DNA of 64,000 nt from Schmidtea nova (taxonomy: Eukaryota): positions 275,900,001 to 275,964,000 of the forward strand of contig CM097883.1 of assembly GCA_044892505.1 (NCBI GenBank), written 5' to 3'. Position 1 is the first letter of the stretch; every line of letters starts with the position of its first letter. The position numbers and the translations under genes are program-made. A model generated the notes under the pieces. The model had not been told where the DNA came from. It did no database searches and was given only the letters and a program-made list of their open reading frames with translations. Below are positions 7,395-49,456 of the stretch, piece after piece.

Positions 7395-10257
7395 ATGAGC
7401 TCTGAAGATGATATAGATGTGTTCAATGATTTTGTGAAGAAAAATAAAGAAAAATTGAAACAAAAGTTTATCGAGTCTCCAGAACTTAATAAAATAAATA
7501 AAGAATTGGATGATTTTATAGTAGATAGTGACATGAGTGTTTCTTCGGACTCTGAGTCTAGTGGATGTAATTTATCACCTGACACAAAATCTAATAGCAA
7601 ACAAAGAAATCAAGTATATAAATCAAGTTTTAAATCATGTGAATTTAAAAAACCTCACCTAAAAGTCTTACAAGATTTTAAAGAAACCTCAAATAAAAAC
7701 ATAACATCATTTCTCTATAATAAAGATAATAATAATAATGACAAAAATTCTCAAAATAACGATTTAAACCTATCGGATAATTTATTTTCTGAAGATAGTT
7801 TATCCAATTTCAGTGATAATTCAGATTCTTTGCTAAATCAAATAATTCCATCTGATGATACCAATTCAATTATTACTGAAACACCGAAAATTTCATTTCC
7901 CACTCAAATCAATAATAAACCCAATTCACAAAACTTTCAACCGATGTTCAAAATACCAGAATTTCCAATACAGAAATCCAATAATAAACCAGCAGAAAGT
8001 ACAAGCATAAAGGCAAGTTATCAAATAGAAAAAGAAAATAAAGAAAATCTCTACTTGACACCGATTAAAAAGGAAATCGATCTTTCTAAACTTATCAAAT
8101 CATGTAATACGCAAAATACAAATACAAAATCTTCACGTTTAATAAAAGAAAGCAGTTTGGATATTTTTGATCGTAGTGACGATAACGATGATAGCTCTAT
8201 TGAGGACTCGATTCAGTCTAATAAATCCCATTCTGAGCAATCATCCATTTTCAGCAGCTCCAGTGATAATAGTGACAGTGAAATAGAGAAAAAAGTAGTG
8301 TTCGGTACCCCGAAAACACAGAAAATTATCAAACCAAAACCGTCACAAACTCTACCTGAAAAAAAATGTGTAAAGAAATTGGATTTTATTTCGTCTTTGC
8401 TTGACAATGTCGACAACGAACTGCGCGACGCTGATGCTATTTTCTATCGATTGAAATTTAAATCTCATCATAAAGAATTGGCGGAAAAAATCTATCAAAT
8501 ATATAATGAGACAGTTTTCCTTGAATTGGTTGATTTTGCTTTTTAATTAAATGGATCAATAAAGTGAATTTTGTATTTCCAGTTACCGAAAGATATTGAA
8601 ATTGAATGGAGTGCTACTTTGCGTAAGACAGCTGGACTATGCCATAATCGTAATCCAATATCACCCATAACAGTAAGAAATAATTTTTAATCTGATTACT
8701 TAAAAGCATTTTAATAATTAGCTACTAACAACTGAAAGTACTATAAAACATTTATAATAAAACTTATAATTCTTTCATTGTATCATGGAAACGCTCGCGT
8801 GCTTTGATATTTTTGGTAATATTATTTAAATGGCAGTGAAAAAATATACTTTTAACTCATAAATTATTATTATCATTTTTAATTTATTTTTTTTTCTTTT
8901 TGGCTTTCTATAGTTATTAACTATACAAAGCAATATTCGAATTTTTGAATTAAATTGCAATTTTTAATTACAACTAAATTACTATAGGGGGAAATAAACC
9001 ACATAAATTGAGAACATTACAATAATAAACTAAAATGTCAATATTATACAAAAATATACATACAATAAGTCATGACCGGTTTTACCAATATGCATTCCTA
9101 GATGACTGCCAGGTGGCACCAGAATAATGGGCGCGCTTGACAATTAATGCCATTTGTTAATCGGATATTCGCAACAGCAAAAGCAAGAAAGATTTATTTT
9201 TTATGATAAATATTGGATAGCAATATGTATTTAATGAAAAGGGAGTTACAATAATGAATTTTATTGTAAAAATTATCGTGCAATTTAAATAACTTCTGAT
9301 AACTCAATTTTTTTTTTAAATCAAATTTGTTAATAATAACCGCATTTTAAAATAGCTTCCTCGGCTTATAAAATATCTCATTTAGAAAAATACTTTTTCT
9401 AAAATATTATTAAATTCTTCTTATAAAAATGAAAATTTATTAGAAAATATTTAGAAAATTTATTTTCCAATTTAACAAAATATTAATTTACTATAAACGC
9501 ATTACATAAGGTTCTTGTTTAATGCCACAAAGGCTTGTATCTGTTTGCCATTGCGGTAGCCACATGTTATTCGCTCGAGACCAATGAAAAAGTTGCATTA
9601 TGAATTATGTGGAAGCTGAGCTATTTAATATACTTATTAACATAGGGTCAACGAATCCATTCAATAAAAATTTCAATGTCGAAAAAAGTTATAACTGACG
9701 CTGATAGATTATTGAAAACATTAGTCCATGAAATGTGCCATGGCGCAGTTTGGATGATTGACAAAATAAGAGGTCATCATGGTCCGTTATGGAAACGGTG
9801 GACACAGCGAGCTCATGCTGCATTCCCGAATGTAACATTGTCTAAGCGATGTCACAATTATAAAATCCATTACAAATTTGAGTATAGATGCATGAAGTGC
9901 AATGCGTCTATTGGGAGACATTCTAAATCTATTGACATAAATAAAATGGTAAACATTTTCATTGATTATGATGCGTAAACAAATGATGTTTAGGTACACT
10001 CAAAATGCAAAGGCAGGTTTGAGTTATTTAGAAATGATAAGAAAGGCTCTAAAATTGTCGTCGATAATCAAACTCAGAAAATGAACGCGTTCACGATATT
10101 TGTAAAAGAAAACTATAATAAGTACAGAAAAGATGGAACCTCTCACTCGGAAGTGATGAAGAAATTATCGGAATTATACAAAATTGCCAAAAAACCTTCA
10201 AATGATCCAGATTTGTGCTCATTGGTAGGATCAATGAATCTCGTAGATAAATCATGA
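7395..10257 (+). CDS. GCNA: GCNA/ACRC-like SprT metalloprotease; join(7395..8528,8583..8672,9646..9948,9994..10257), ~596 aa
   Basis: Long acidic Ser/Asp/Asn-rich disordered N-terminus, then YNETVF-LPxDIEIEW...KTAGLC, HEMCH zinc motif, GHHGPxWK, HNYKIHYKFEYRCxxC...GRHSKS knuckle and C-terminal HMG-like segment (NAFTIFVKENY...SHSEVMKKLS). All three introns are GT-AG and phase 0, and the spliced frame is open to TGA 10255-10257. Confidence 0.88.
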
Positions 10258-13508: not shown

Positions 13509-15171
13509 TTCTAGGTAATCACGAAAGTTTTTCGAAGTTTTTCCAAGTGTTTAAGTGAGCTAAAAGTAGTTATAGTTATGGATAAAAGTAGTAGAGTAAA
13601 AGTGTAAGTTAGGTAGTTATCAAAAGTTATTGCACTGAGTTTGGCTGCTACTTATATTCTGTTTTGTTCAGCCAAAACAGTCAATCAGATATTTTCTCCT
13701 CCATAATTGGTCCAAAGAATCCAATTCATCAAATAATATGGATATTTTGACCAATTAATTTTCTATTTCTTTTCAATTCTCTTGTATTTATTCTTATTTT
13801 AATTTAATTTATTTCTGTTTATCATTTCCATTCCTTGGAGGGGGGGTAATCTATCATTATTTTGAATTATGTTTTATTTTTCTTTCTTTAACGTTTCTGT
13901 TTTTTCTTCCTTAACATAATTTTGTTAGTACCATTTTAATTGTTCTTGATTCTTTATTTCTTTTTTAATTATTTGAGTTTATTTCTGTTCTTGTGGGTTT
14001 TCACTCTACTATTCCTTGCAAATTTTGATTTATTTACTCTCCTAATATTTTTACTCTTTACTTCTTATTTTATTTTCCATTTCACTTTTTCCTTTCGATG
14101 TTTTAAGTTTCACTTTTATTTTCTATTTATTTTATTATTATTTTAATTTTTTACTTTTAATTCTGTGTTTATGAGTTGTGCTAACTCAAGTAAGGGAAAT
14201 AGAGCGGTCTATCACAAGCCATTTATCCTTTTATTGTTATTTCTTTATTATTAATATTTCTTTTCTATTATCATTTTTATTATTGTCATTATGGCTATTT
14301 AAACCGCAGTGATCTCGGTAGGTACCCTTACGGACACCGGATAACCCCCCTTTTTCTGCTAATTTTTTATTATTAATATTTTAATTAAATTCAATATTTG
14401 AATTTTAAAAGCTTACTATAGTAATAAACTATAGTAAGCTGACAATTTGAAAAATAAATTGATTAAAAAAGAATTAATTAAAAAAATACAATTTGACGAA
14501 CGAAACCTGTTGATATCGCTAGAACAGAAATCTGGCTGTTACGAAAAGGGAAAAAGAGTAGAAAACCAAATAAATCAAAAAAAATATTAACGGGAAAAAA
14601 AAGAAAGCTAGTTTTATCAGTTAATTTAAATTCTTACATTATCAATTCCTACATTAACAGTTCCTACAATTATCAGTTCTTACATTATCAATTCCTACAT
14701 TATCAATCCCAATAACCGAACCAGCTCTACACCCATTTACTTTATCAATCGGTTTTGTCAGTACCAATAATAGAGTCGGCCATACAGCAATTAGATCAGT
14801 TTTCAAGCAGTGTTTGGTGCGAATAATAACTTATTTTCTTAAATAAATCGAAAGGAACGGAAACTAAAAGTTATCAAGAATTTTAAAGTAACTTTTCGTG
14901 GTTTTTAGTTTATTTTTCTTTGATAAAATTTGGTAAAGTAATCAATTGTTTGTATTATTCGGTTGTTATTTATATTTTATATATTCAATTATTGTAAAAT
15001 TTCTTACCGCAAGCACTTACACAACAAACAACCCGAGTGTCTACACACAAACATTGTAAAACTCTCTCGGGTTCTACAACTTCTCCCTCAACACACCTTT
15101 ATTCACGACATAATAATACACAACGTAATAATAAACATATTAAATAAAACACAACTTATTACCATAAAAAC

Positions 15172-15184
15172 TGGTGTCAGAAGT
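15172..15184 (+). promoter_or_regulatory. Primer-binding site complementary to the 3' end of tRNA-Leu
   Basis: TGGTGTCAGAAGT directly after the LTR; the same core is at 20489-20499 (element B) and 37463-37475 on the minus strand (element C). The tRNA identity is recalled from the ...CUUCUGACACCA 3' end of animal tRNA-Leu. Confidence 0.7.
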
Positions 15185-15360
15185 CAACACAACACACACA
15201 CTCGTCGTTTTTTTCAAACGTTAACGCCTTTAGCATACCTATTATAGAGGTATAAGGATTAGCGTCACTTTTAGCCGAACACAGTAGGCTATATCCTTCA
15301 GTTAACCTCAATTTTTTTACATCAACAAACATTAAAAGAAACAACAGCAAAATAAATCAA

Positions 15361-16436
15361 ATAGCATCAAATCAAACAAATCCTAACACCTGACAAACAC
15401 CCATTGACAACGAAAATGCACAATCCCAACATCAAAACAACAATTATTATTACAACCCCGAAAATCACACACCATAAACTCTGTAATTAACTCGAAACCT
15501 AACCTACCAAACTACTTTACCGACGAAAATGGTACTCCACAAAAATGGCTAGAATTTGCCAATTTAACATAAACATTGTCTGGAATTAAATCCACAAAAA
15601 CCCTATGTTCCAATATTATAGCCGCCCTTCCTAGTAACAAACTAAATGAAATCGCGGATTAAATTGAAGAAATTTCTAAGGATGAAGACCCCTTTCACAA
15701 ACTGTGTAACATCCTTACGAACAAAAATAAAATAAATAGACGGCAAATGCTCGAATCTTGCCTCACCAACACTAAGTTAGGTGACTATAAACCCTCTGAT
15801 TTCCTCAGACAATTAAAACAAAAACAAGAATATTTGCAACCAAATATCACAAATTCGGGTTCAAATGAACTAGTTAAAGAATTCTTTTTACGAGAAATGC
15901 CACCAGAAATCAGGCGGATTCTCGCAGCCAGCAATAACGCCGATGTTAAAACACTTGCCGACATAGCGGAAAAAACCAACGAAGAAATTTATCCGACTAT
16001 ATGCAGCACCCAAAACTACAACAAAAACAAAATAAACTACAATAATCAACCAAACAACGAGACAAACAAAAACATGAATAAACTATTAAACACCCTAATC
16101 GGAAAATTTGACGAAATCATAGTCGAAAACAAACAAGTTAAAGTGGAACTGGTCGAAATTAAAGAAAAATGCTACAGGCAAAACAACAATTCAAATTCAA
16201 TGTCTGAAAGATACAACAGATAATACTACAACAGAGACCATTCACCAAATCAATACAACAGAAACAGGTCAAACTCGCCAAACAAATACAATAATTATCG
16301 AGACAAAAGTCCAGAAAAACAAGCGAGAACAATTTAATAAATGAAAATCATTGCTATTTTCATAATAAATTTGGTGAAAAAACCTTTAAATGCACTAAGC
16401 CCTGCAACTTCCATAAAACGAAACAGGGAAACTAAA
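15361..16436 (+). pseudogene. gag: gag of element A
   Basis: Aligns to the gag of element B with start ATG>ATA and several stops; includes ORF 15747-16223 and the CYFHNKFGEKTFKCTKPC (CHCC) knuckle near 16350-16405. Confidence 0.8.
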
Positions 16437-16437
16437 A

Positions 16438-17418
16438 ATGTCACCAATGATAGCACCCACATTTGGTGACAAAAACAATACATTCATGGTGCACTCAAAT
16501 AACACAGAATTCCTAATTGACACAGGTTCTGTGATCTCCTTATTACCCCATTACCTGCACAAAAACTCAAAAAACGCAGAAAAACATTTAACCGCAGCAA
16601 ATGGCACAAACATTAAAACATTTGGTGAACACACACTAACTTTAACAATCAATTCAAAGAAATACAGCTGGACATTCACCATAGCTGAGGTCCAACAAGC
16701 AATAATAGGAGCAGACTTCCTAACAAATTACAACCTTACAGTAGACTGCCGAAACAAAACATTAACTGAAAACTCAAACACAAACAAAGAATCCGTCAAA
16801 ACTATGACGACAACCGATTCAAGAATAGACATTGGTGTTATCCAAATGGGTCCAAAAAACAACAAATCAAAACAAAACATGAATCATGGCCCAGAAATAA
16901 ACGCACTTCTGGAAAAAGTCGACAAACTTATCGCACCAGTAACTTTCGACAAGAAAGCAAACATAAAAAACAACGAAGAAATAAATAAACAAATGACAAC
17001 TAAAAACAGTGAGAACATTGAAAAAAAGTCAAAAGGAATACTAAAAATGAGACCAAACTCAGAAAACGATGGCAAAACAATACTAACAACCGATTATTTA
17101 CTAATAAAAAAGCCATATACAAAAGGTTTCGAACCAAAATACGAAGGCCCATTCAAACTGCTGGAAATTAACAAAAAGGTGGCAGCAATAATAAAAGACA
17201 ACATCAAAATAAGAATCAATCTAAGTCGAATAAAACCGTATCACAACAATCAAAACATCTCAAACAGCCCCACAAAAGAAAAAGCACCGACACAAACAAA
17301 GACACAGCCAAACGACAAACACATCTCATTCAACTCCAAAAACTCAATAAAACTGTTTGACAAAGACACAATAATCACACCCCTATACATAAAACGATAC
17401 AGCGAATGCTTTAAATAA
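16438..17418 (+). CDS. Retropepsin fused in frame to the integrase C-terminal tail (deletion product)
   Basis: FLIDTGSVISLLP and IIGADFL protease motifs joined directly to KPYTKGFEPKYEGPFKLL, which matches the tail of element B ORF 23663-24988. Confidence 0.8.
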   Translation: MSPMIAPTFGDKNNTFMVHSNNTEFLIDTGSVISLLPHYLHKNSKNAEKHLTAANGTNIKTFGEHTLTLTINSKKYSWTFTIAEVQQAIIGADFLTNYNLTVDCRNKTLTENSNTNKESVKTMTTTDSRIDIGVIQMGPKNNKSKQNMNHGPEINALLEKVDKLIAPVTFDKKANIKNNEEINKQMTTKNSENIEKKSKGILKMRPNSENDGKTILTTDYLLIKKPYTKGFEPKYEGPFKLLEINKKVAAIIKDNIKIRINLSRIKPYHNNQNISNSPTKEKAPTQTKTQPNDKHISFNSKNSIKLFDKDTIITPLYIKRYSECFK

Positions 17419-17839
17419 AAACACAAATTCACACAAGCAAAACACACGCATAACACAGCTAATTGTACAGTTTTTTATCATTTTGTAAATATGTAACTTA
17501 TTGTGTTAAACTGTTGTAAAACATAACAAAACAAAAATTAGGTTAATAACGTTGGTAATTTGTAAATTTTTCGTTCTATTTGTTAACCTCCGATTTTAAA
17601 GGGGGAAGTAATGTAATGAGTTGTGAATTTTTGTTATTTCATTATTATTATTTATTTTCTATTATCATTTTTATTGTTGTCATTATGTCTATTTAAACCG
17701 CAGTGATCTCGGTAGGTATCCTTACGGACACCGGATAACCCCCTTTTTCTGCTAATTTTTTATTATTAATATTTTAATTAAAATTCAATATTTGAATTTT
17801 AAAAGCTTACTATAGTTGTTGCTTCGATTTAGAAAGGCA

Positions 17840-18139
17840 GTCATCTTTCATTATCAGTAGAAAACAACTGGAAGGTTGTCCATATCTCAATTCTGCATTA
17901 AACAGTATCGGTGAAGCGTGTATGAACCATTTCTCTGACATTAAGTCATAATTCTCAATTGAACTTTCAAGATCATCCTTGTATATTCCAACAGCTGCTC
18001 TCACGAACCTGTGTTGTGGTCGTTCTACGACCTTGTCAACGATTCTTAATATATAAGACCTTTTCAACGTTTCAAATCCGGAATAATCAATAGCATTGTC
18101 TAGAGTTTCCGCACTTTTCACAACGATCTCATAGATATC
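17840..18139 (-). pseudogene. RRM1: Ribonucleotide reductase large-subunit internal fragment
   Basis: GFETLKRSYILRIVDKVVERPQHRFVRAAVGIY...YDLMSEKWFIHASPILFNA...QPSSCFLLIMKDD matches class Ia RNR1 (GFKTLERSY...ERPQH...THASPTLFNAG...QLSSCFLL); truncated at both ends and lacking the DRDFxY segment. Confidence 0.9.
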
Positions 18140-18175
18140 ACCAAATGAATGTCCCAAGTTCTTCAATTTACAAAA

Positions 18176-18577
18176 TCCACCGTTGAAAGCAGCACAATTC
18201 AATGAACTTTTATCTTTAGGAACGGAAATATATTTATTGACAACTGGTTCCCGTTCCATTAAATGATAAATGTTATCGTTGTCGACTGCTCTTTCTAAAT
18301 CTTCAATTTCCTTCGAATGAATAGCTTTCCAAAATGGGCCTTTAATATATAATAATAAGGATTTCAGCTTGGTTTTTCTTTTAAACTGCTTATCGCGAAG
18401 AACAACCAGATGTAACAGTCGAACACCGACATGACATCAAAAATCAGCTAGCTTTGAATGAATTTCATCAGTATTTCCAGATTTATCTTCAGCATATTTA
18501 ACCATTTCCACAAACAGATATGCACATGAAGTTAAATTAGTTTCTCCTTTCAATTTAGTCAAATTTCGAATAATTCC
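18176..18577 (-). pseudogene. TRAPPC5: TRAPPC5/Trs31 fragment (N-terminal ~two thirds)
   Basis: Frame reads LTKLKGETNLTSCAYLFVEMVKY...SKLADF*CHVGVRLLHLVVLRDKQFKRKTKLKSLLLYIKGPFWKAIHSKEIEDLERAVDNDNIYHLMEREPVVNKYISVPKDKSSLNCAAFNGG, collinear with remembered TRAPPC5 (ALLFSELVQH...VGARVLD...RETK...VKGAVWKALFGKEADKLE...IIEREPLINTYISVPKENSTLNCASF); one TGA at 18437-18439. Confidence 0.85.
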
Positions 18578-20026
18578 ACAAACAATTCAAAATTCAATAA
18601 AAATGCCGTTCAAATTTATAATTATTTATCTAAAAGTCAAAATGTTTACAAGAAAATCAATTTAAAGATTAACAATTTTAAACAAATCAAAATTTCATTA
18701 TAGTTAATTTAATTTTATAACATATAAGATTTTTTTTTCTAAAATTAAGTTTTTAGTATCACACATTCTATTTTTCTTTCTTAATTTTTCTTTCAATTTT
18801 TCTTTTAATTTTAATTTTTGTTTTCTTTACGATTTAGATTTATTGTTGTTCCTTAGGAAATTGACTCAAAATTTAAAGTCATTTCCTAAGTTACTAAATC
18901 ACACAAGGTCAGGCGGAACAAACTGATCAACAATAGTAATAAACTATAGTAAGCTGACAATTTGAAAAATAAATTGATTAAAAAAGAATTAATTTAAAAA
19001 ATACAATTTGACGGACGAAACCTGTTGATATCGCTAGAACAGAAATCTGGCTGTTACGAAAAGGAAAAAAGAGTAGAAAACTAAACAAATCAAAAAAAAT
19101 ATTAACGGGAAAAAAAGAAAGCTAGTTTTATCAGTTAATTTAAATTCTTACATTATCAATTCCTACATTAACAGTTCCTACAATTATCAGTTCCTACAAT
19201 TATCAGTTCTTACATTATCAATTCCTACATTATCAATCCCAATAACCGAACCAGCCCTACACCCATTTACTTTATCAATCGGTTTTGTCAGTACCAATAA
19301 TAGAGTCGGCCATACAGCAATTTGATCAGTTTTCAAGCAGTGTTTGGTGCAAATAATAACTTATTTTCTTAAATAAATCGAAAGGAATGGAAACTAAAAG
19401 TTATCAAGAATTTTAAAGTAACTTTTCATGGTTTTTCAGTTTATTTTTCTTTAATAAAATTTGGTAAAGTAATCAATTGTTTGTATTATTCGGCTGCTAT
19501 TTATATTTTATATATTCAATTATTGTAAAATTTCTTACCGCAAGCACTTACACAACAAACACCCCGAGNNNNNNNNNNNNNNNNNNNNNNNNNNNNNNNN
19601 NNNNNNNNNNNNNNNNNNNNNNNNNNNNNNNNNNNNNNNNNNNNNNNNNNNNNNNNNNNNNNNNNNNNNNNNNNNNNNNNNNNNNNNNNNNNNNNNNNNN
19701 NNNNNNNNNNTTATTATTTGATTTTTATGATTGCATATTACGTGTGATTGCGGTTCAGGTTATAAAGGCGTGGTATCCCCCACATCCCTGCGTGTCGAGA
19801 ACAACATCTTTTTCTTTATTATTGTGATTATTTTTATTATTTTTTATTCGAAATTCAAATTTGGCTTACTATAGCAAATGCTATAGTAAGCCAAATTGAC
19901 AAATTGAAAATATGGATTTTATGAATTTAAAAAATAATAATTAAAATAAAAACTGAAAGACCTAATTTTGATTAAAACTTATGAAACAAACTACTAAATG
20001 AAAAGCATATTCTGAAACGGAATATC

Positions 20027-20239
20027 AATAAATAAAAGACATTAAATCTGAGTTAGAAGATTGCCAAAATCCATTTCCTCCAAATACTTCAATAAATAAA
20101 AGACATCAAATCTGAGTTAGAAGATTGCCATAATCCATTTACTCCAAATACTTCAATAAATAAAAGAAATTAGATCTGAGTTAGAAGATTGATAAAATCC
20201 ATTTACTCCAAATACTTCGATAAATAAAAGACATTAGAT
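20027..20239 (+). repeat. 64-bp tandem array in the 5' LTR of element B (3 units plus a partial)
   Basis: Unit AATAAATAAAAGACATTAGATCTGAGTTAGAAGATTGCCAAAATCGATTTCCTCCAAATACTTC starting at 20027, 20091, 20155 and (partial) 20219. Confidence 0.9.
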
Positions 20240-20679
20240 ATCACTCCAAAAGTCAAAGTAATTTTTTTATAGTTCGAGTTATTAGAAACTTTAGATTGTG
20301 ATAATAATTTATTTGTGAATAATTAATTTATTTTGTTAATTTGTTGTTACTGTTTTTAGCATCACATAGCATACACCCCGAGTGTCTGCACACGAATACC
20401 GCAAGATTCTCTCGGGATCTACAATTCTCTTCTTACACTCACAGACGCTAAAGACATTTAAAACAACATAAATAACAAACATAATAACTGGTGTCAGAAA
20501 TCAACACAACACATAGACACTCGTCGTTTTTTTTCAAACGTTAACGCCTTCAGCATACCTATTATAGAGGTATAAGGATTAACGTTACTTTAAACCGAAC
20601 ACAGTAGGCTATATCCTTCAGTCAATCTCATTTGTTTCGCATAAAAAAACAACAGAACAAACAACAACAATACAATTAA

Positions 20680-22440
20680 ATGGCATCGAACCAAGCAAAC
20701 CCAAATACTTCACAAACACCCATGGACAACGAAAATACACATTCCCAACACCAAGACAACAATATTTATCACAACGACGAAAACACCCAAATACAAAGGG
20801 AAAATAGCCACTATTATTTTAACCAAGAAAACACTCACACAATTAATCCCATGATTAACCAAATCCCAAATATTTTTATCAACGAAGGAGGTTCGGTGCA
20901 AAAATGGTTGAAACTAGTCAAATTGACATTAACCCTGAGCGGGATAACCTCACCAAGACTAATATGCTCACAAATATTCACGGCACTCCCAAACAATATA
21001 CGCAAAACAATTGCGGATCAAATAGACAAATTTTTCAATTGCAATAACCCATTTGAAAAACTGTGCAGCATATTAGCAAATTGGGACGAAACAAACAAAA
21101 AAGAAATACAAGAACCTTTCACAAACAACAGGCAAAAGGATAATATCCAAAATAATTTTTCAAATCCACTAAAACAGAATTTGGAGTACGTCCAAACAAA
21201 ATTAGCAAACATTGACGTAAATGAACAGAGATCATGTCAAACATTAACAACTAAAAATAAGGAAATCGAAAATAAAAGGTGGACAGACATTGTCGATAAA
21301 ATAAATGCAGGAGATTACCCCAGCATTAATAGTACTCATGACTACAAAAACAAAATACTTAACCATGAACAAGAGGGTGAAGAAAAGGAAAGAACAGAAA
21401 TTAACGAAACAAACAGAATTCTTAGTAAGTTAATAAGTCAACTAGACAAAATATCAACTGAAAACAAAAGGTTCAAATTAGAACTAAAAGAAATTAAAGA
21501 AAAAAATCTAAAACAAAACTACTGTCCAAATCAAATATCGTACAGGCTCAATAGGCCAAAACCAAACTCAGGAAATCAACACCAAAACTTTTACAACAAT
21601 AAAAACAAAGGATCTGACAATAGACAAAAATTCTGGAAACCAGAAATTAGATTATCAAACCAAGAATGGTGTTACTTTCATTGCAAATTTGGAGAAAAAG
21701 CATTCAGATGCACAAAACCATATAGATACAACGAAAAAAACACAGAAAAATTGAAAACTTTACAAGTAGTTATTCCTACATCTGGTGAAACAAATACAGA
21801 AAAACTGAAAACGTTACCAGTAGTAGCACCTACATTTGACAATAAACATACAACCTTTTCAGTATGTTCAAATAAAATAGAATTCCTAGTGGACACGGGT
21901 TCAGTGATATCACTATTATCACATATTTTGTACAAAAATACAAAAAATCAAAGCAAACTACTAACTGCAGCCAATGGATCTAACATAAAAACTTTTGGGG
22001 AACAGGATATAACCCTAACAATAAACAACAAACCTTACAAGTGGACATTCACGATAGCCGAAGTTCAACAAGAAATAATAGGTGCAGATTTCTTATCGAA
22101 ATATAATTTTCTGGTCGACTGTAAAAACAAAAGACTTATAGAAAATTCAAACACAACAGATATACAACACGTCATGATATGCAAAACCAAGCCGAAGATG
22201 GACATAGGCGTTGTTTTAATAAACAATAAAAATAAAGTTCTTTTTCAACAAAGCAAAACAACCCCAGAAATTAGCAAACTACTGAATCAATTCAGTGAAT
22301 TAACTGAACCAGTTCAATTTAGCGATGATTCAGAACACATAACTGAACACGCAATAATAACTAATGGAAATCCAGTACACGCAAAAGTAAGGCCACTGGA
22401 TCGCGAAAAAAATAGAAATTACGAAAAACATTTTCGATGA
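20680..22440 (+). CDS. gag: Gag-protease ORF of element B
   Basis: WCYFHCKFGEKAFRC knuckle and FLVDTGS protease motif; ends prematurely through an extra A in the run near 22405. Confidence 0.85.
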   Translation: MASNQANPNTSQTPMDNENTHSQHQDNNIYHNDENTQIQRENSHYYFNQENTHTINPMINQIPNIFINEGGSVQKWLKLVKLTLTLSGITSPRLICSQIFTALPNNIRKTIADQIDKFFNCNNPFEKLCSILANWDETNKKEIQEPFTNNRQKDNIQNNFSNPLKQNLEYVQTKLANIDVNEQRSCQTLTTKNKEIENKRWTDIVDKINAGDYPSINSTHDYKNKILNHEQEGEEKERTEINETNRILSKLISQLDKISTENKRFKLELKEIKEKNLKQNYCPNQISYRLNRPKPNSGNQHQNFYNNKNKGSDNRQKFWKPEIRLSNQEWCYFHCKFGEKAFRCTKPYRYNEKNTEKLKTLQVVIPTSGETNTEKLKTLPVVAPTFDNKHTTFSVCSNKIEFLVDTGSVISLLSHILYKNTKNQSKLLTAANGSNIKTFGEQDITLTINNKPYKWTFTIAEVQQEIIGADFLSKYNFLVDCKNKRLIENSNTTDIQHVMICKTKPKMDIGVVLINNKNKVLFQQSKTTPEISKLLNQFSELTEPVQFSDDSEHITEHAIITNGNPVHAKVRPLDREKNRNYEKHFR

Positions 22441-24988
22441 ATTACTGGAAAACAACATTGTCAAACATTCAAATTCAGAATGATCTTCTGCACTGATGTT
22501 AAAACAAAAAGCAAACGGTAAATGGAGAGCCTGCGATGATTACAGACTATTAAACAAAAGCACAGAGCCAGACAGCTATCCATTACCAATTATAAAAGAC
22601 ATAATCAACCGAATAAAGGGCGCAAAGTACTTTTCAAAAATAGATCTGCAAAAAGCATATCATCATATCCCAATAAGGAAAGAAGACATAAAAAAGACTG
22701 CAATAGCAACACCGTTTGGAATGTTCGAATACAACCGAATGCCTTTCGGTCTAAGAAATGCAGCAGCGACTTTCCAGCGATTTATGGATCAAACAATGAA
22801 AGGAACCAAAAACACAATCGCCTATCTGGACAACATTTTAATAACCAGTCTAGACAAGGAAACACACTTAAAAGACATAAAGAACGTGTTCGAGACATTA
22901 AAAAAGGCAAAACTAAAAATCAACGCACCAAAATGCGAATTCCTGAAAACCGAAATAAACTTCCTTGGACATACCCTAAACGAAAAAGGAACTCAGCCAA
23001 TCAAAAACAAAATAAGCAATGTTAAAAATTACAAATTACCAATTAACACAAGTGAGTTGAGGAGATTTCTAGGAATGGTAAACTTCTACCATTCTTACAT
23101 CCCAAACTGCAGTAAATTACTAGCACCATTAAATGACATTATCACAACAAAACGAAATGTCACAATAAACTGGACTCAACAAACAACCGAAGCATTCGAG
23201 AAAGCCAAAGAAAGTCATTCAACGGCAACATTAATCGGATATCCAGACCCAGAAATAGAATACCAATTAACTACTGACTGCTAAGGTTTCGCAATGGTGG
23301 CAACAATTTTCCAGGAAAACAAATTCGGAAAACAACCACTAGGTTTCTTCTCTAAAAAGCTAAAGTCACACCAAACAAGATATTCGACTTTCGACAGAGA
23401 ACTCTTAGCAATACATGATTCAATCAAACACTTCCAACATTTACTCGAAGGGCGAACTTTCAAAATATTCACCGACCATAAACCGCTAACAAACGCAATA
23501 GAAATGAAAAACCCTTTGCCAAGACAGATCAGACAAATCAACTTCATTTCACAATTCAATTGTACAATAAACTATGTAGCGGGAAAATCAAATATAGCAG
23601 CAGACGCCTTATCCTGAACCGAAAGTGACATAAATTCCTTAGAATTCGGAGAAATAATTGATTTGGATCAAATCAAACCCAAACAAAACGAAACAATAAG
23701 GAACCTGCCTACTAAACACAGCCTGAAACTCCAGGAACTTAACGGAGTATGGTACGATGTATCCAACGAAAGCAACAGACGAATTCTACTACCCGAAGAA
23801 TTCCGCCAAAAATGCATCGAAAAGATCCACTCAATTAATCATCCGGGAAACAAAACAACTTTCGAATTAATACATAACAATTATATATGGCCTGACACGA
23901 GGAAAGAGAAAAAAAAATTTATCAAGGGCTGCCATAATTGCCAAATAAGCAAACCAACAAAGAAAATCAAAACCGAAAAAGTAAACTTTCCAAGCAGCCA
24001 ACCTTTCGAGATGATCCACATTGACATAGTAGGACCGTTACCACCAAACAACGGGTACAACTACCTACTAACAATCATCGACAGAAAGACAAACTGGTTC
24101 GAAATTGTCCCATTAAAAGAAATATCCGCACAAAATATATGCAATAACATCGAACTAAATTGGATAGCTTGCTATGGACAACCCGAAATACTAATAACAG
24201 ATCAAGGGAGACAGTTCGAATCAGAAATATTCAGCGCACTATGTAAAAAATACGAAATTAAACGGAATAAAACAACAGCCTACAACCCACAAGCGAATGA
24301 AAAAGTCGAAAGACTGCATAGAGCGCTTAAACAAAGCATCCAAACCAGAGCAAACGACAAAAATTGGTTGTCCGAACTATCTACAATTTTACTAGGATTA
24401 AGAAACACACTCAACTCAATCGACAACGAGAGTCCTTCGTACAAAGTCTTCGGCAGAGAATCAAATCTCCCTACACTTAAAAACAGTACAGCAGAAAACG
24501 TTAAAACAAACAAACAACCAACCAACACAAACAACGAAAGAGTAGAAAAGAAATTAAAAGGAATCTTAAAAAAGAGAGCAAACTCTGAAATGGACGGAAA
24601 AGTAGTTCTAACGACAGACTACGTCCTAATAAAAAAGCCCTTCACTAAAGGTTTCGAACCAAAAAACGAAGGCCCATTCAAACTGCTGGAAATTAACAAA
24701 AATGTGGCAACAATTATAAAAGACAACATCAAAATAAGAATCAATCTAAGACGGATAAAAAAGTATCACAAAAATCAAAACATCTTAAACAATCCCACAA
24801 AAGAAAAAGCACCGACACAAACAAAAACACAACCAAACCACAAACACATCTCATTCAACTCCAAAAACTCAATAAAACTGTTCGACAAGGACACAATATT
24901 TACACCCTATACAAAAAACGTTATAGCGAATGCCTCAAATAAAAAAGCACAAACATACACAAGCAAAACACAGGCACAGCATAGCTAA
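22441..24988 (+). pseudogene. pol: pol (RT, RNase H, integrase) of element B
   Basis: DYRLLNK, KIDLQKAYH, MPFGLRNA, YLDN (catalytic YxDD mutated), RELLAI/TDHKPL, HSINHPG...C..C zinc finger, HIDIVGP...TDQGRQFES...E core; broken by stops and frameshifts into ORFs 22496-23284, 23294-23617 and 23663-24988. Confidence 0.9.
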
Positions 24989-25478
24989 TTGTACAGTTTT
25001 TACTCTTTTGTAAATACGTAAATGTTATGGTTAAAACGTTGTAAAAAACAAAACAAATACAAAAACAAAACAAAACAAACAAAAATAAGTTTTATTTTGA
25101 TATTTTGTAAATTTTTTGTTTAAATGTTAACCTCCGGTTTTAAAGGGGGAAGTTATGTGAATGTCGTATTTTATTATTTGATTTTTATGATTGCATATTA
25201 CGTGTGATTGCGGTTCAGGTTACAAAGGCGTGGTATCCCCCCCATTCCTGCGTGTCGAGAACAGCATCTTTTTCTTTATTATTGTGATTATTTTTATTAT
25301 TTTTTATTCGAAATTCAAATTTGGCTTACTATAGCAAATGCTATAGTAAGCCAAATTGAAAATATGGATTTTATGAATTTAAAAAATAATAATTAAAATA
25401 AAAACTGAAAGACCTAATTTTGATTAAAACTTATGAAACAAACTACTAAATGAAAAGCATATGCTGAAACGGAATATC

Positions 25479-26074
25479 AATAAATAAAAGACATTAAATC
25501 TGAGTTAGAAGATTGCCATAATCGATTTCCTCCAAATACTTCAATAAATAAAAGACATTAGATCTGAGTTAGAAGATTGCCAAAATCGATTTCCTCCAAA
25601 TACTTCAATAAATAAAAGACATTAGATCTGAGTTAGAAGATTGCCAAAATCGATTTCCTCCAAATACTTCAATAAATAAAAGACATTAGATTGAGTTAGA
25701 AGATTGCCAAAATCCATTTCCTCCAAATACTTCAATAAATAAAAGACATTAGATCTGAGTTAGAAGATTGATAAAATCCATTTCCTCCAAATACTTCAAT
25801 AAATAAAAGACATCAAATCTGAGTTAGAAGATTGCCATAATCCATTTACTCCAAATACTTCAATAAATAAAAGACATTAGATCTGAGTTAGAAGATTGCC
25901 AAAATCGATTTCCTCCAAATACTTCAATAAATAAAAGACATTAAATCTGAGTTAGAAGATTGATAAAATCCATTTACTCCAAATACTTCAATAAATAAAA
26001 GACATTAAATCTGAGTTAGAAGATTGATAAAATCCATTTACTCCAAATACTTCGATAAATAAAAGACATTAGAT
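25479..26074 (+). repeat. 64-bp tandem array in the 3' LTR of element B (9 units plus a partial)
   Basis: Units start at 25479, 25543, 25607, 25671, 25734, 25798, 25862, 25926, 25990 and (partial) 26054. Confidence 0.9.
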
Positions 26075-26321
26075 ATCACTCCAAAAGTCAAAGTGATTTT
26101 TTTATAGTTCGAGTTATTAGAAACTTTAGATTGTGATAATAATTTATTTGTGAATAATTAATTTATTTTGTTATTTTGTTGTTACTGTTTTTAGCATCAC
26201 ATAGCATACACCCCGAGTGTCTGCACACGAATACCGCAAGACTCTCTCGGGATCTACAATTCTCTTCTTACACTCACAGACGCTAAAGACATTTAAAACA
26301 ACATAAATAACAAACATAATA

Positions 26322-39389: not shown

Positions 39390-39482
39390 CATTATGACTC
39401 ATCGATGACTCATAACAAAGAACCCCCCTGGGGGTAGAAAATTTTTTAATGACTCATCGCGATGACTCATCGACGACTCATT
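39390..39482 (+). promoter_or_regulatory. Cluster of AP-1/GCN4-like TGACTCA motifs in the left terminus
   Basis: Four perfect TGACTCA plus one CGACTCA; the right terminus (51520-51623) has five TGAGTCA, one CRE-like TGACGTCA and one variant. Confidence 0.5.
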
Positions 39483-39499
39483 TCAAATTCAAATTTTAA

Positions 39500-40530
39500 A
39501 TTTGAATTTCCAAAGGTCAAATAAGGTCAAACCTTCAAACAAGGGTATCATTCGAAAGGTCTTGGAAAGGTCTATCCAATGGTCATACGCTTGAAGGTTT
39601 ATGGAGGGTCCTTGACCTTCGAAGGGTCAAAAACCTTCAACCTTTTTTAAACCTTATAATATATATATCATTCAAAAGGTAATTGAGAGGTAAGTAAGAT
39701 GGTCATACCCTCGAAGGTGTAAGGTGGGTGCTCAACCTTCAAAGGGTCCAAAACCTTCAAACCTTATAAGTTATATATCATTCGAAAGGTAATTGAGAGG
39801 TAAGTAAGATGGTAATACCCTCGAAGGTGTATGGTGGGTGCTCAACCTTCAAAGGGTCTAAAACCTTCAAACCTTATAACTTATATATCAAACAAAAGGT
39901 AATTGAAATGTGCACACAATGGTCATACCTTCAAAGGTCATACCCTTGAAGGGTCCAAGGTTAAAATTTTTAAAACTATATAATATGTATATCAAACAAA
40001 AGGTAATTGTGAGATGTGTGTGTGTGTGTTACAATTTGCCAGACGAGAGTGTGTATGTGTGTGTTACAAATCCTTTTTTCAAACCTTATAATATGTATAT
40101 CAAACAAAAGGTAATTGAAATGTGCACACAATGGTCATACCTTCAAAGGTCATACCCTTGAAGGGTCCAAGGTTCAAATTTTTAAAACTATATATCATAT
40201 GTATATCAAACAAAAGGTAATTGTGAGATGAGTGTGTGTGTGTGTGTGTTACAAATCCTTTTTTCAAACCTTATAATATGTATATCAAACAAAAGGTAAT
40301 TGAAATGTGCACACAATGGTCATACCTTCAAAGGTCATAACCTTGAAGGGTCCAAGGTTCAAATTTTTAAAACTATATAATATGTATATCAAACAAAAGG
40401 TAATTGTGAGATGAGTGTGTGTGTGTGTTACAATTTGTCAGGCGAGTATACATATGTGTGTGTGTGTGTTACAAATCCTTATTCAAACCTTATAATATAC
40501 ATATCATTCGAAAGGTAATTATGGTGTGTG
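39500..40530 (+). repeat. Subterminal tandem arrays of the Polinton left end (mirrored at ~50690-51500)
   Basis: ~110-120 bp units rich in ACCTTCGAAGGT-like palindromes, followed by longer units containing (TG)n tracts. Confidence 0.8.
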
Positions 40531-41304
40531 TGTGTGTTACAATTATTTTCTATTTCCTACCTGAATTACAACAAAGACATTGCAAACCATGTGCAACGAA
40601 ACAAATACTAATGTAACTTGTATTTGAATATATGTACACGATTATATTTCATGTGTGTGTGTGTGTTTGGATTTTTAATATGAATACGGGTAAGCATTGA
40701 ACCCACGTTCTGATTCTTTCATTCTATAACACCCCGCGTGCAAATTGATAATATTAATTTGAATAATNNNNNNNNNNNNNNNNNNNNNNNNNNNNNNNNN
40801 NNNNNNNNNNNNNNNNNNNNNNNNNNNNNNNNNNNNNNNNNNNNNNNNNNNNNNNNNNNNNNNNNNNNNNNNNNNNNNNNNNNNNNNNNNNNNNNNNNNN
40901 NNNNNNNNNNNNNNNNNNNNNNNNNNNNNNNNNNNNNNNNNNNNNNNNNNNNNNNNNNNNNNNNNNNNNNNNNNNNNNNNNNNNNNNNNNNNNNNNNNNN
41001 NNNNNNNNNNNNNNNNNNNNNNNNNNNNNNNNNNNNNNNNNNNNNNNNNNNNNNNNNNNNNNNNNNNNNNNNNNNNNNNNNNNNNNNNNNNNNNNNNNNN
41101 NNNNNNNNNNNNNNNNNNNNNNNNNNNNNNNNNNNNNNNNNNNNNNNNNNNNNNNNNNNNNNNNNNNNNNNNNNNNNNNNNNNNNNNNNNNNNNNNNNNN
41201 NNNNNNNNNNNNNNNNNNNNNNNNNNNNNNNNNNNNNNNNNNNNNNNNNNNNNNNNNNNNNNNNNNNNNNNNNNNNNNNNNNNNNNNNNNNAATAACTTT
41301 GAAA

Positions 41305-41394: not shown

Positions 41395-41801
41395 TTAGAA
41401 AATTAAAAAATAAATAACAAAATAACTCTAAATACATTAAATCAATAACACATAAAAGAAGACGGTAATAGTTTTAATTGATTTCGCAATTTTTTATACA
41501 ATCAACAATTATGGCCCTAAGGAGGACCATTTTTAACTTTCACAAATATTTGCGAATCTCTCTGTTTGATTCTCTCTGTTTTATTCTCAGGTTAATATCA
41601 TTAACATATCTTTTTGAATCTCTTTTTACAATCATTAACAAATCGTTGTTTCTTTTTTCATCCCTGTTTTCCTAATTTCTAAACAATATTAGTTTTAATT
41701 GATTGCGCAATATTTTATACAATCGCGAATTGTGGCCCTGAAGAGGGCCGATTGTTCATTCTCAATATTTTTTTGATTTTCTTTTTGTTTCTTTATCGCC
41801 A

Positions 41802-46814: not shown

Positions 46815-49456
46815 ATGGAAGAATACTATTCATACAAATATAATGGTGTCACCCACCTCCTCTGCCCAAAATGTAAAATTATAGAGACTACTTCTTATAA
46901 TGAATTTTTTCATCATCATAGGTCACATCTTACCTAATATATGCCTTCTAAGAAATCTCTTTTTAATAGTTTATACCAAAACTATATTTCTAATAACTTT
47001 AATCATAATAATAATCTTAATAATTCGAACAATATTAATAATAATTATAATAACAACAACAACAACAATATTAATAATTTACAAAATAATAATTCCAACA
47101 ATAACAATAACAATATTAATAATTCCAACAATTAATAATTTTACCGGGGTAAAAATTTATAAATCATTTTTCGGATTAGATTGCGTCGATCAATTTCTTA
47201 ATGAAATTGAGTTGATTAGTAAAAATATAGTGACGCCGTTTTATTATAAAAATTATCAAAAGAAAATGATAATTACAGGTCTTCAACAATTAGAATTTGA
47301 AAACAGCACAATTTGTTATTTGTGCAATAAGCCTTTAGTTTGTCCAGTTAGGGACCATGACCATTTTACCGGTCTATTTCTTGGCTCAGCTTGCAAAGCT
47401 TGCAATGTATCAAGGCAAATTAGACATACCCTTCCCGTCATCTTTCATAATTTAAAGGGTTATGATCTACACCACATCTTAAAATTTGGCCTTTCGAAAT
47501 ATCATTCCTGGAATATTAGTTGTGTTCCTTTGACCAGCGAGAAATTCCTTAGTCTTTTTGCTAGGATTGACTCCTTAACCGTTAAATTCATAGACTCTTA
47601 CCAATTTGTCAGCGAGTCTTTAAATAATGCTGTCAAAACTTTAACTTCTTTACCCTTGACAGAATCAGAATTTCAGGGTACAATAATAACTGCAAAGGGA
47701 ATTTTTCCTTATGATACGGCTACTTCTTTAGAAGTTTTACAAAACACACATGAATTACCTCCTATCTGGAAAGACGTCAAACCAGATGAATATGAGACAG
47801 CTCAGAGAATTTGGCGGGAAACCTCATGTACATTGCTTTTTGATTACATGATGGTTTATTTAAAACTCGATGTATTCCTTTTAGCTGATTATTTTCAGCA
47901 ATTTAGATCGAAATCTATTGCACTTAACCGACTAGAGCCACTAAATTTTTTGGGAATTCCAGGTATGTCTTGGAATTCCGCCTTATTAACTTTAAAATCT
48001 CCAATTGAGCTCCTCACCGATATGGAGATGTATAATTTTTTTCGAGGGCGGTATCCGTGGCGGATTAACCTTTGTAAATAAACACTATGTAAAAACAGGC
48101 CCGGATACCGCATTGCTTTACATAGATATAAATAATTTATATGGTTGGGCTTTAAGTCAGCCTCTACCATGCAGTAACTTTGAATGGGTCACAGATGATC
48201 AATTATTAAATGAAATTATTGCTGAATGTACATCGGTAAATCTAGATGCACTTCATTATGGTTACACCATAGAAGTGGATTTGGAAATACCGGCATCGAT
48301 TCACGACAAACTGGATGATCTTCCAGTTGCCGCTGAAAAGATGTGTGTACCGGGTTCGAAAGTTGAGAAGCTGCTTCTAACGCACTCTCCAAAGAAGAAT
48401 TATGTTCTTCATTGGAGGCTTCTGCAACAGTTTATTAAATTAGGTGTTAAAATAACTAAAACACACAGAGCAATTAAATTCACACAAGAAAAAATATTTG
48501 AAAATTATATCAATACAAATACGGCGTTACGAGCAGCGTCGACAAATAAATTAGACAAAAATTTTTATAAATTACTAAACAACAGTCTTTACGGCAAGAC
48601 TGTTGAAAATCTTAAAAAACGAATTAATTTGCGTTTGTGCAATTCTTCACAGAAATTGTTGACATACTGTTCCAAACCGACTTTCCGAAAATCCACTAAA
48701 ATCGACAATGACTTGATTTCTGTTTTGTTAAGGAAGGAATCAGTGTGTTTGGATAGACCTAGTTACATTGGTCAAACAGTACTAGATTTATCCAAACTTA
48801 GGATGTACCAGCTGCAGTATGAAGAGTTGCAAAAATATCGTGACGACTTCAACTGCGAAATTAATATCGTTGCTGGGGACACTGATTCCTTCTTTTTGGA
48901 AATTAAAAATCTTTCTTTAGACTTACTTTTACCGGCTATGATTAGGGACAATCTTCTGGACACTTCGAATTATGACCCAAATCATCCTTTATACAGTAGG
49001 AACCTTGATTCTGTCATTGGAAAATTCAAAGACGAGAATAAAGGGCTACTGTATGAAGAGTGGGTGTTCTTAAGACCAAAGTGCTATAGTTTAATGGGTG
49101 ATGAGGCTTGTATGAAAGCCAAGGGTATTTGCATGAAAGATGCTGGACTAACACATCAGTCGTATCTTGATTGCTATTTAAATAATAAAATATATACAGT
49201 CCCCCAGTTCAGAATAACTAGTAAGAACCATCAGTTATTTAGTATTAAAAATAATAAAAGGGCTTTGACTTGTAAGGACGACAAGCGTAATTGGATAGAT
49301 AAAAATAAAAGTCTGGCATATGGCCACTATAGAGGGGGTGACACCAATATATTTGTAGATGATCCAGCAGAAGAAATCAATGATGTACCGACATTGCCGA
49401 TGGATGAAGACCCTTATGCTTTTTATGAGCCTCCGGACCACGATTATTTCAGATGA
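46815..49456 (+). pseudogene. polB: pPolB of the right arm with a ~1.43-kb internal deletion and the same T7 frameshift
   Basis: Reverse complement of the left arm; junction at ~47130-47132 (3-bp microhomology) removes the equivalent of ~44129-45559; ORFs 46900-48081 and 48005-49456. Confidence 0.93.

What the first reader, a model, noticed from the sequence alone, without database searches (positions are those of the whole stretch)
17817..18932. Mobile cassette carrying an in-frame TRAPPC5-RRM1 chimera
Seen: TGTTG...CAACA ends, 5-bp TSD and a known empty site; inside, a TRAPPC5 fragment runs without frameshift through ~11 linker codons into an RRM1 fragment, with one TGA. Neither piece has an intron. 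Known: TRAPPC5 (vesicle tethering) and RRM1 (dNTP synthesis) are unrelated genes; Pack-MULEs, Pack-CACTAs and Helitrons shuffle host fragments, but multi-gene capture by an element with integrase-type ends is rarely described in animals. Inference: a Pack-like, integrase-mobilised exon-shuffling vehicle, possibly formed by RT template switching between co-packaged host mRNAs. The ORF track shows only an RNR-like ORF, so the TRAPPC5 half is easily missed.
Basis: partly seen in the sequence, partly recalled or inferred. Interest (0 to 1): 0.75.

Follow-up and report, generated by a model that had tools for sequence, protein, structure and literature searches.

The report
Solo-LTR-like insert carrying two host-gene fragments
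A 1.1-kb piece of retrotransposon-type DNA that carries dead fragments of two unrelated host genes (TRAPPC5 and RRM1) fused in one reading frame has inserted into the repeat of another retrotransposon. This kind of capture is already documented in animals, and only this one decaying copy could be found.

Summary
Window 17817-18932 is a 1116-bp insertion with TGTTG...CAACA ends and a 5-bp duplication (ATAGT). It sits in the 3' LTR of an internally deleted Ty3/Gypsy-like element, and that element's 5' LTR keeps the uninterrupted site (14418-14422).

On the minus strand, one frame reads TRAPPC5 codons 10-140 of 184 (92% identical to P0001; one in-frame stop, no frameshift). Twelve unassigned codons follow, then about 103 codons of a eukaryote-type RNR large subunit (RRM1), which is visibly decayed.

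The insert has no terminal direct repeats and only a 5-bp inverted terminus. This excludes TRIM/LARD, Pack-type and Ginger-type elements, Helitrons and LINE-made pseudogenes.

My best reading is a solo LTR, or an LTR-derived unit, whose R/U5 part was replaced by pieces of host mRNA through reverse-transcriptase template switching. That mechanism, including multi-gene in-frame chimeras, was described in flies, mosquito, fish, chicken and mammals (Tan et al. 2016, PMC5131818).

The "Pack-like vehicle" idea has no support: I found no second copy anywhere I could search. The source genome is not in the collections, so parental introns, junction microhomology and copy number remain untested. Interest is modest.

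The parts
17817..18932 (-). The inserted unit (1116 bp). Ends are TGTTG...CAACA. The cargo is read on the minus strand.
   Evidence: Boundaries come from the alignment with the empty paralogous LTR. There are no internal terminal direct repeats. Only 5 bp of perfect inverted terminus.
17812..17816 (.). Target-site duplication, left copy (ATAGT)
18933..18937 (.). Target-site duplication, right copy (ATAGT)
14418..14422 (.). Uninterrupted target (single ATAGT) in the 5' LTR of the same host element. It lies inside a 12-bp perfect inverted repeat with a 7-bp spacer (14410-14440).
18569..18932 (-). Non-genic, AT-rich (GC about 0.20) 5' part of the unit in cargo orientation. Proposed to be U3. Its first 88 nt (18932 down to 18845) are themselves bounded by TGTTG...CAACA and hold a 13/14-bp hairpin.
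   Evidence: No protein match. No trace of TRAPPC5 codons 1-9. Composition. Hairpin z-score -2.8. No similarity elsewhere in the window beyond AT-rich chance matches.
18176..18568 (-). TRAPPC5 fragment: codons 10-140 of a 184-codon relative. Truncated at both ends, with one in-frame stop and no frameshift.
   Evidence: tblastn with P0001 gives a single ungapped match, 92%. BLASTP of the two pieces gives 93% each. PF04051. TRAPPC5 structures.
18140..18175 (-). Twelve in-frame codons assigned to neither gene (junction or filler, or a variable stretch of the RRM1 parent)
   Evidence: This is the gap between the TRAPPC5 match and the first RNR-aligned residue (yeast alignment).
17831..18139 (-). 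RRM1 (class Ia RNR large subunit) fragment of about 103 codons, equivalent to yeast Rnr1 residues about 119-228 (human match 140-228). Truncated at both ends, with no stop and no frameshift, but decayed at conserved positions.
   Evidence: PF00317. Human 3hnc_A E 1.5e-28 and yeast 1zyz_A E 4.9e-25. tblastn with P0003. The fragment differs at 6 of 29 invariant columns and 15 of 57 columns conserved at 90% or more across 24 homologues; 21 of the 24 homologues used as controls differ at 0-4.
17817..17830 (-). Last 14 nt of the unit in cargo orientation, the only non-genic sequence at this end. Proposed to be the tip of U5 (integrase attachment end).
   Evidence: The RNR match ends at 17831. The unit ends at 17817.
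17810..18259 (-). Longest ATG-started ORF (149 aa): 28 TRAPPC5 residues, then the linker, the RRM1 fragment and a 7-residue tail that runs into the target duplication
   Evidence: Not on record as a called gene in the public collection.
14165..15171 (+). 5' LTR of host element E1 (approximate start), followed by the primer-binding site at 15172-15182
17612..19568 (+). 3' LTR of host element E1. It is preceded by the polypurine tract at 17600-17608, interrupted by the insert, and runs into the N gap at 19569-19710. It is 94-95% identical to the 5' LTR.
15172..17611 (+). Internal region of E1, about half the length of its neighbour's. Only a weak protease match remains.
19711..26321 (+). Neighbouring related Ty3/Gypsy-like element E2. 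It has LTRs with 64-bp tandem repeats. Its gag-pol region is split into at least three ORFs carrying protease, RT/RNase H and integrase domains.

Best explanation
The unit is the remnant of an LTR retrotransposon insertion, most likely a solo LTR, and most of its body is retro-copied host mRNA.

Shown:
- It entered the 3' LTR of an older Ty3/Gypsy-like element by an integrase-type reaction (TG...CA ends, 5-bp staggered cut), after that element had itself inserted.
- It carries TRAPPC5 codons 10-140 and about 103 codons of RRM1, head to tail in one frame. Both pieces are truncated at both ends, and there is no poly(A) tail.
- Both pieces are dead as genes. TRAPPC5 has one in-frame stop. RRM1 has changes at 6 of 29 invariant positions. 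Neither piece is a complete domain.

Inferred mechanism, taking the cargo strand as the element's sense strand: minus-strand DNA synthesis primed at the primer-binding site copied only the last ~14 nt of U5. It then switched template to a co-packaged RRM1 mRNA, then to a TRAPPC5 mRNA, and then back into the element's U3 (the 364-nt AT-rich part). The normal completion of reverse transcription would then place this chimeric 'U3-TRAPPC5-RRM1-U5 tip' block at both ends of the DNA copy. After integration, recombination between the two identical LTRs would remove the interior and leave one LTR between the 5-bp duplications.

Because the original R region is gone, such a product should copy itself poorly. 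This predicts one or a few copies rather than a family of vehicles.
For: - Insertion and empty site.
- Ends and duplication.
- Cargo identity and colinearity.
- No terminal direct repeats, so not a complete two-LTR element.
- Only 14 nt of non-genic sequence at the cargo's 3' side, against 364 nt at its 5' side.
- Both fragments are sense to each other, 5'- and 3'-truncated and without poly(A). These are the features listed for LTR-mediated retrocopies, including multi-gene chimeras made by more than two switches and junctions with 2-26 nt of de novo sequence (PMC5131818).
- The reverse-transcription steps invoked are the standard ones (PMC6894440).
- The setting is a nest of LTR elements with intact-looking PBS and PPT motifs.
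- A size of 1.1 kb and a 5-bp duplication are ordinary for an LTR (established knowledge of LTR retroelements).
Against: - No full-length relative, no second solo copy and no cargo-free LTR with the same ends was found. The source genome itself could not be searched, so the solo-LTR status rests on structure and prior frequency only.
- In published animal cases the cargo replaces internal ORFs and both LTRs remain. Cargo inside the LTR itself is not what that paper describes.
- No promoter or polyadenylation signal can be assigned in such AT-rich sequence (one search is a bacterial-type scan and uninformative).
- Parental introns and junction microsimilarity, the two direct marks of the RNA route, are untested.
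- The RRM1 part looks more decayed than the TRAPPC5 part. This could mean two captures at different times rather than one event.
Confidence: 0.5

Rival explanations
1. A complete, LTR-less non-autonomous element. On this reading the 1116-bp unit as it stands is what moves. It keeps only short attachment ends that an integrase supplied by autonomous elements recognises, and relatives elsewhere in the genome carry other cargo.
For: The ends and the duplication fit an integrase reaction. The unit lacks any internal LTR pair. Tan et al. note that chimeric retrocopies can behave as non-autonomous elements with several insertion sites.
Against: Retroelement copying needs a primer-binding site, a polypurine tract and a terminal redundancy, and none is recognisable inside the unit. 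No second copy was found in a 64-kb window packed with repeats or in any collection searched. Solo LTRs are far commoner than such units (established knowledge).
Confidence: 0.15
2. DNA-level capture. On this reading the gene fragments were pasted as DNA (for example as filler during break repair, or by ectopic recombination) into the LTR of an integrated element or into a DNA transposon with integrase-like transposase (Ginger or GingerRoot type), and then moved with it.
For: Ginger-type elements also end in TG...CA, and GingerRoot elements often carry gene fragments (PMC6839031). An in-frame junction has a 1-in-3 chance, and same orientation a 1-in-2 chance, so neither proves an RNA route.
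Against: According to that paper, Ginger1 makes 4-bp duplications, Ginger2 and GingerRoot make 6-bp ones, and GingerRoot has 100-150-bp inverted repeats. Here the duplication is 5 bp and the inverted terminus is 5 bp. DNA-level captures in GingerRoot keep introns. Here 131 and about 103 codons run uninterrupted, although the parents' intron content is unknown.
Confidence: 0.15
3. The fusion pre-existed in the host. On this reading TRAPPC5 and RRM1 are neighbours (or a read-through or chimeric transcript exists), and a single piece of that locus or transcript was captured.
For: Nothing positive. It cannot be excluded, because neither parent lies in the window and the genome is not in the collections.
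Against: It would require loss of the last 44 TRAPPC5 codons, the intergenic DNA and the first ~120 RRM1 codons, while leaving the frame intact. The two parts appear to differ in decay.
Confidence: 0.07
4. Not a transposon insertion at all: a chimeric cDNA or DNA scrap captured at a chromosome break, with the TG...CA ends and the duplication arising by coincidence.
For: Only one copy was seen.
Against: An exact 5-bp duplication and a 5-bp inverted TG...CA terminus both sit at boundaries that were fixed independently by the empty site. The chance of the inverted terminus alone is about 0.002.
Confidence: 0.03

Closest known systems
LTR-mediated retrocopies of animals (Tan et al. 2016, Genome Res, PMC5131818), e.g. 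the two-gene chimera CG4799_CG11924_r of Drosophila melanogaster and a four-gene 'Super' retrocopy reported in the mammal section
   Same: Partial mRNA copies truncated at both ends, with no poly(A) tail. Several parent genes are joined by repeated template switches. Short de novo sequence can occur at junctions. Products are often in frame. The copies are embedded in LTR-retroelement sequence and inserted by its integrase.
   Different: In that paper the cargo replaces internal ORFs and both LTRs are kept. Here there is no LTR pair, and the cargo fills two-thirds of a unit that itself has LTR-type ends. Microsimilarity at junctions could not be examined here.
Maize Bs1 (partial exons of three host genes inside an LTR retrotransposon; cited in PMC5131818)
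   Same: Multi-gene, exon-only cargo carried by an LTR retroelement, present in low copy number.
   Different: Bs1 is a two-LTR element from a plant and is transcribed. This unit is animal, solo and decayed.
Ordinary solo LTRs
   Same: TG...CA ends, a 5-bp duplication, about 1 kb in size, no internal repeats, nested in other LTR elements.
   Different: Solo LTRs are normally non-coding. Here about 740 of 1116 bp are host coding sequence.
Pack-MULEs and GingerRoot elements carrying gene fragments (PMC6839031)
   Same: Non-autonomous carriers of fragments from one or more host genes.
   Different: Those have long inverted repeats and different duplication lengths (6 bp for GingerRoot; 9 bp for MULEs from my own knowledge). 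They acquire cargo at the DNA level, with introns kept.
Retroviral transduction of cellular genes (own knowledge, not tested here)
   Same: Host mRNA-derived sequence is recombined into a retroelement genome during reverse transcription.
   Different: Transduced genes sit in the internal region and are usually selected for function. Here the cargo sits in the terminal block and is dead.

Membership tests
Solo LTR of an LTR retrotransposon | 5'-TG...CA-3' termini with a short inverted repeat | tested here: met
   TGTTG...CAACA
Solo LTR of an LTR retrotransposon | 4-6-bp target-site duplication | tested here: met
   ATAGT on both sides and single in the empty copy
Solo LTR of an LTR retrotransposon | Full-length relatives exist in which the same block is present at both ends, next to a PBS and a PPT | not testable with these tools
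   None in the window. The source genome is absent from the collections.
Solo LTR of an LTR retrotransposon | U3-R-U5 organisation with promoter and polyadenylation signals | tested here: inconclusive
   The sequence is too AT-rich for motif calls to mean anything.
LTR-mediated retrocopy (Tan et al. 2016) | Partial mRNA copy, truncated at 5' and 3' ends, without a poly(A) tail | tested here: met
   TRAPPC5 codons 10-140 of 184. RRM1 about 103 codons of the 792-residue human (888-residue yeast) large subunit. No A-run at either junction.
LTR-mediated retrocopy (Tan et al. 2016) | Parental introns absent | not testable with these tools
   The parent loci were not retrievable. P0001 has no contig on record.
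LTR-mediated retrocopy (Tan et al. 2016) | Microsimilarity between partners at the switch points | not testable with these tools
   This needs parental mRNA sequences and a cargo-free element.
LTR-mediated retrocopy (Tan et al. 2016) | Flanked by both LTRs of a discontinuous LTR retrotransposon | tested here: not met
   No terminal direct repeats inside the unit. The surrounding LTR is a continuous element interrupted by the insertion, with a duplication.
TRIM / LARD (non-autonomous two-LTR elements) | Terminal direct repeats with a PBS and a PPT between them | tested here: not met
Ginger / GingerRoot DNA transposons | Inverted terminal repeats of tens to 150 bp, and a 4- or 6-bp duplication | tested here: not met
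   5-bp inverted terminus and 5-bp duplication. Criteria from PMC6839031.
Pack-MULE / Pack-CACTA | Long MULE inverted repeats or CACTA termini, with a 9-bp or 3-bp duplication (own knowledge) | tested here: not met
Helitron | No duplication, insertion between A and T, 5'-TC and 3'-CTRR ends with a 3' hairpin (own knowledge) | tested here: not met
   A 5-bp duplication and TG...CA ends
LINE-made processed pseudogene | 3' poly(A) tail, truncation at the 5' end only, longer variable duplications (features listed in PMC5131818) | tested here: not met
   No poly(A). Both fragments are truncated at the 3' end. The duplication is 5 bp.

The most novel reading that the evidence does not exclude
The unit is not a solo LTR but a complete minimal integrase substrate. 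It would belong to a family that keeps only short attachment ends plus a 364-nt leader and repeatedly picks up pieces of host mRNA. That would make it an animal retro-counterpart of Pack-MULEs. Alternatively, lying in a nest of dead elements, it could feed small RNAs against TRAPPC5 and RRM1.
Probability: 0.08. Interest if true: 0.65.

Novelty: new member of a known kind. Interest (0 to 1): 0.3.

Why it matters
If the reading is right, this is one more natural example, from an unsampled animal lineage, of retroelement reverse transcription stitching unrelated host messages together. It has one unusual detail: the cargo lies in the terminal block rather than in the interior. That placement would point to switching during the very first stretch of DNA synthesis.

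The example adds to the catalogue of exon-shuffling raw material but opens no new question. The product is truncated, stopped and decayed, and it shows no sign of function or spread.

Tried and rejected
Searches for further copies and for the parent genes:
- Exact look-ups of the 149-aa ORF, of the TRAPPC5 relative P0001 and of a 383-aa window ORF found nothing on record.
- Exact-pattern scans for the TRAPPC5/RRM1 junction and for one terminus in viral contigs, and for the junction in prokaryote genome contigs, found nothing.
- A sensitive BLASTN of the unit against the rest of the window gave only AT-rich chance matches.
- Rfam and tRNA scans of the window were empty.

Attempts to name the organism:
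- The nearest named TRAPPC5 proteins are about 52% identical (a mite, insects, nematodes, flatworms).
- The best integrase relative is 40% identical.
- The source is therefore an unsampled, AT-rich (about 28% GC) animal, and it is not human.

Readings rejected:
- TRIM/LARD, Ginger, Pack-MULE/CACTA, Helitron and LINE-made pseudogene (see the membership rows).
- Hidden TRAPPC5 codons 1-9 or 141-184 in the flanks.
- Shared termini with the host Gypsy LTRs. Those begin TGTAA or TGTGA and are unrelated in sequence to the unit.
Full report
**1. Setting**

The window is AT-rich (GC 0.20-0.35) and holds eight N runs. No Rfam family or tRNA was found in it. It is largely made of mobile elements.

Three related Ty3/Gypsy-like LTR elements share the primer-binding motif TGGTGTCAGAA, at 15172, at 20489 and on the minus strand at 37475. 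Two of them also have the polypurine tract AGGGGGAAG, at 17600 and 25144.

- Element E2 (about 19711-26321) has protease, RT/RNase H and integrase domains spread over at least three ORFs.
- Element E1 (about 14165 to the N gap at 19569) has an internal region about half as long. Only a weak protease match remains there.

Polinton-type polB ORFs lie further right.

The source is an animal but could not be named. The closest named TRAPPC5 proteins are about 52% identical (a mite, insects, nematodes, flatworms). The best relative of the integrase is 40% identical. The sequence is not human.

**2. The observation**

E1's two LTRs are 94-95% identical. They align continuously except for 17817-18932, which is present only in the 3' LTR.

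- The 5' LTR has a single ATAGT at 14418-14422.
- The 3' LTR has ATAGT on both sides of the extra DNA (17812-17816 and 18933-18937).
- The duplication cannot be read as 4 or 6 bp.
- A third, more diverged LTR copy is also uninterrupted at this point.
- The extra DNA begins TGTTG and ends CAACA.

These boundaries were fixed by the empty site and not chosen by motif. A 5-bp inverted terminus there has a chance of about 0.002 at this base composition.

The insertion is therefore real. It was made by a staggered 5-bp cut, and it is younger than E1. The target lies inside a 12-bp perfect inverted repeat.

**3. The cargo**

One minus-strand frame runs from about 18580 to 17810 with a single internal stop. 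Searched as two pieces on either side of that stop, it gives the following:

- Pfam TRAPP (PF04051, E 6.5e-14) and the RNR large-subunit all-alpha domain (PF00317, E 2.5e-17).
- Solved-structure matches to TRAPPC5 of zebrafish and of entry 7b6d, and to the RNR large subunit of human (E about 1e-28) and yeast.

*TRAPPC5 part.* A word search found one close relative, P0001. It is a 184-residue TRAPP protein from a metagenome catalogue.

- The two pieces match its residues 10-52 and 54-140 at 93% each.
- tblastn joins them in one ungapped match, 18568-18176, at 92%.
- The fragment therefore lacks the first 9 and the last 44 codons. It has one in-frame stop, no frameshift and nine amino-acid changes.
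- No trace of the missing codons lies in the flanks.

*RRM1 part.* This fragment (18139-17831) corresponds to yeast residues about 119-228.

- It has no stop and no frameshift.
- It differs from 24 homologues at 6 of 29 invariant columns and at 15 of 57 columns conserved at 90% or more. In the same test, 21 of the 24 homologues differ at 0-4 columns.
- It is therefore decayed, apparently more so than the TRAPPC5 part.

*Junction and ends.*

- Twelve codons between the two fragments match neither gene.
- At the cargo's 3' side only 14 nt separate the RNR match from the end of the unit.
- At the cargo's 5' side lie 364 nt of GC-poor (0.20) non-coding DNA.
- The outermost 88 nt of that part are again bounded by TGTTG...CAACA and contain a 13/14-bp hairpin (z -2.8). 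I attach no weight to this.

**4. What the unit is not**

- It has no terminal direct repeats, so it is not a complete two-LTR element, TRIM or LARD.
- Its inverted terminus is 5 bp and its duplication is 5 bp. That fails the criteria for Ginger1 (4 bp), Ginger2 and GingerRoot (6 bp; 100-150-bp inverted repeats for GingerRoot) given in PMC6839031. It also fails the criteria for MULE and CACTA carriers.
- A duplication and TG...CA ends exclude a Helitron.
- The absence of poly(A), the 3' truncation of both fragments and the short duplication exclude a LINE-made processed pseudogene.

**5. What it most likely is**

TG...CA ends with a 5-bp duplication are the signature of retroelement integrase. 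A 1.1-kb unit with such ends and no internal repeats is ordinarily a solo LTR.

The cargo has the features that Tan et al. [quoted passage not shown]

- partial mRNA copies truncated at both ends;
- no poly(A) tail;
- chimeras of two or more genes made by extra template switches;
- occasional 2-26 nt of de novo sequence at junctions;
- frequent in-frame products.

The authors explicitly call this process a mechanism of exon shuffling. The same pattern is known from maize Bs1.

The asymmetry of this unit (364 nt at one end, 14 nt at the other) suggests a specific route, which I give as inference:

1. Minus-strand synthesis began at the primer-binding site and copied only the tip of U5.
2. It switched to an RRM1 mRNA, then to a TRAPPC5 mRNA, and then back into U3.
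3. The standard strand transfers (PMC6894440) would then duplicate the chimeric block at both ends.
4. Later recombination between the two LTRs would leave a solo copy.

This route explains the common orientation of the fragments, their order, the double truncations and the tiny 3' terminus. It also predicts a product that has lost its R region and spreads poorly.

**6. What remains open**

I could not reach the source genome. Exact look-ups of three window-related proteins found nothing. The one metagenome scan returned only distant RNR genes. Pattern scans of viral and prokaryote contigs were empty. The window holds no second copy and neither parent gene.

Four points are therefore untested:

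- whether the parent genes have introns in the captured spans;
- whether the junctions show microsimilarity;
- whether an LTR family with these ends exists;
- whether there are further copies.

The rival readings keep some weight for this reason. They are a complete LTR-less carrier, DNA-level capture and a pre-existing fusion.

**7. Verdict**

It overreaches in calling the unit a Pack-like vehicle and in treating such capture as nearly undescribed in animals.

The finding is a new example of a known kind of event. It is a single decaying copy, with one unusual feature: the cargo lies inside the LTR-like block.

**8. Conduct**

- The pieces on either side of the stop were searched apart.
- I did not look up the window's Gypsy or Polinton-type ORFs in public assemblies, to avoid fetching virus-like elements of an animal.
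- Slips are declared under 'tried and rejected'.

Noticed in passing
window 9676-9978 (+): A 100-aa ORF with an SprT-like metalloprotease domain (PF10263, E 4e-12) and its zinc ribbon, standing alone in repeat-rich DNA. It could be an exon of a host gene or another captured gene fragment.
   Followed up: no
window 41413-44128 and 47130-49845, with outer arms 39467-41119 and 50107-51533: A very large inverted duplication. The inner arms of 2716 nt are 100% complementary, and the outer arms 97-100%. It carries Polinton-type polB ORFs and is interrupted by N runs. It is either a true palindrome or an assembly artefact.
   Followed up: no
window 19961-20388 and 25413-26223: 64-bp tandem repeats inside the two LTRs of Gypsy-like element E2, with different copy numbers in the two LTRs.
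   Followed up: partly
window 14410-14440 (empty copy); 17804-17816 and 18933-18951 (filled copy): The insertion target sits inside a 12-bp perfect inverted repeat separated by 7 bp. This may reflect a preference of the integrase for bendable or palindromic DNA, or it may be chance.
   Followed up: no
window 14182-14230: The 5' LTR of E1 carries about 50 bp near its start that the 3' LTR lacks. This is a small indel that arose after the element inserted.
   Followed up: no
window 19569-19710 (N gap): The end of E1's 3' LTR and the start of E2's 5' LTR both fall in this gap. It therefore cannot be decided whether the two elements abut, share sequence or were joined by the assembler.
   Followed up: no
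window 18845-18932 (-): The outer 88 nt of the insert are themselves bounded by TGTTG...CAACA and hold a 13/14-bp hairpin. A 9-nt string next to this unit recurs just inside the other end of the insert. Repeats of that length are expected by chance in such AT-rich DNA.
   Followed up: partly
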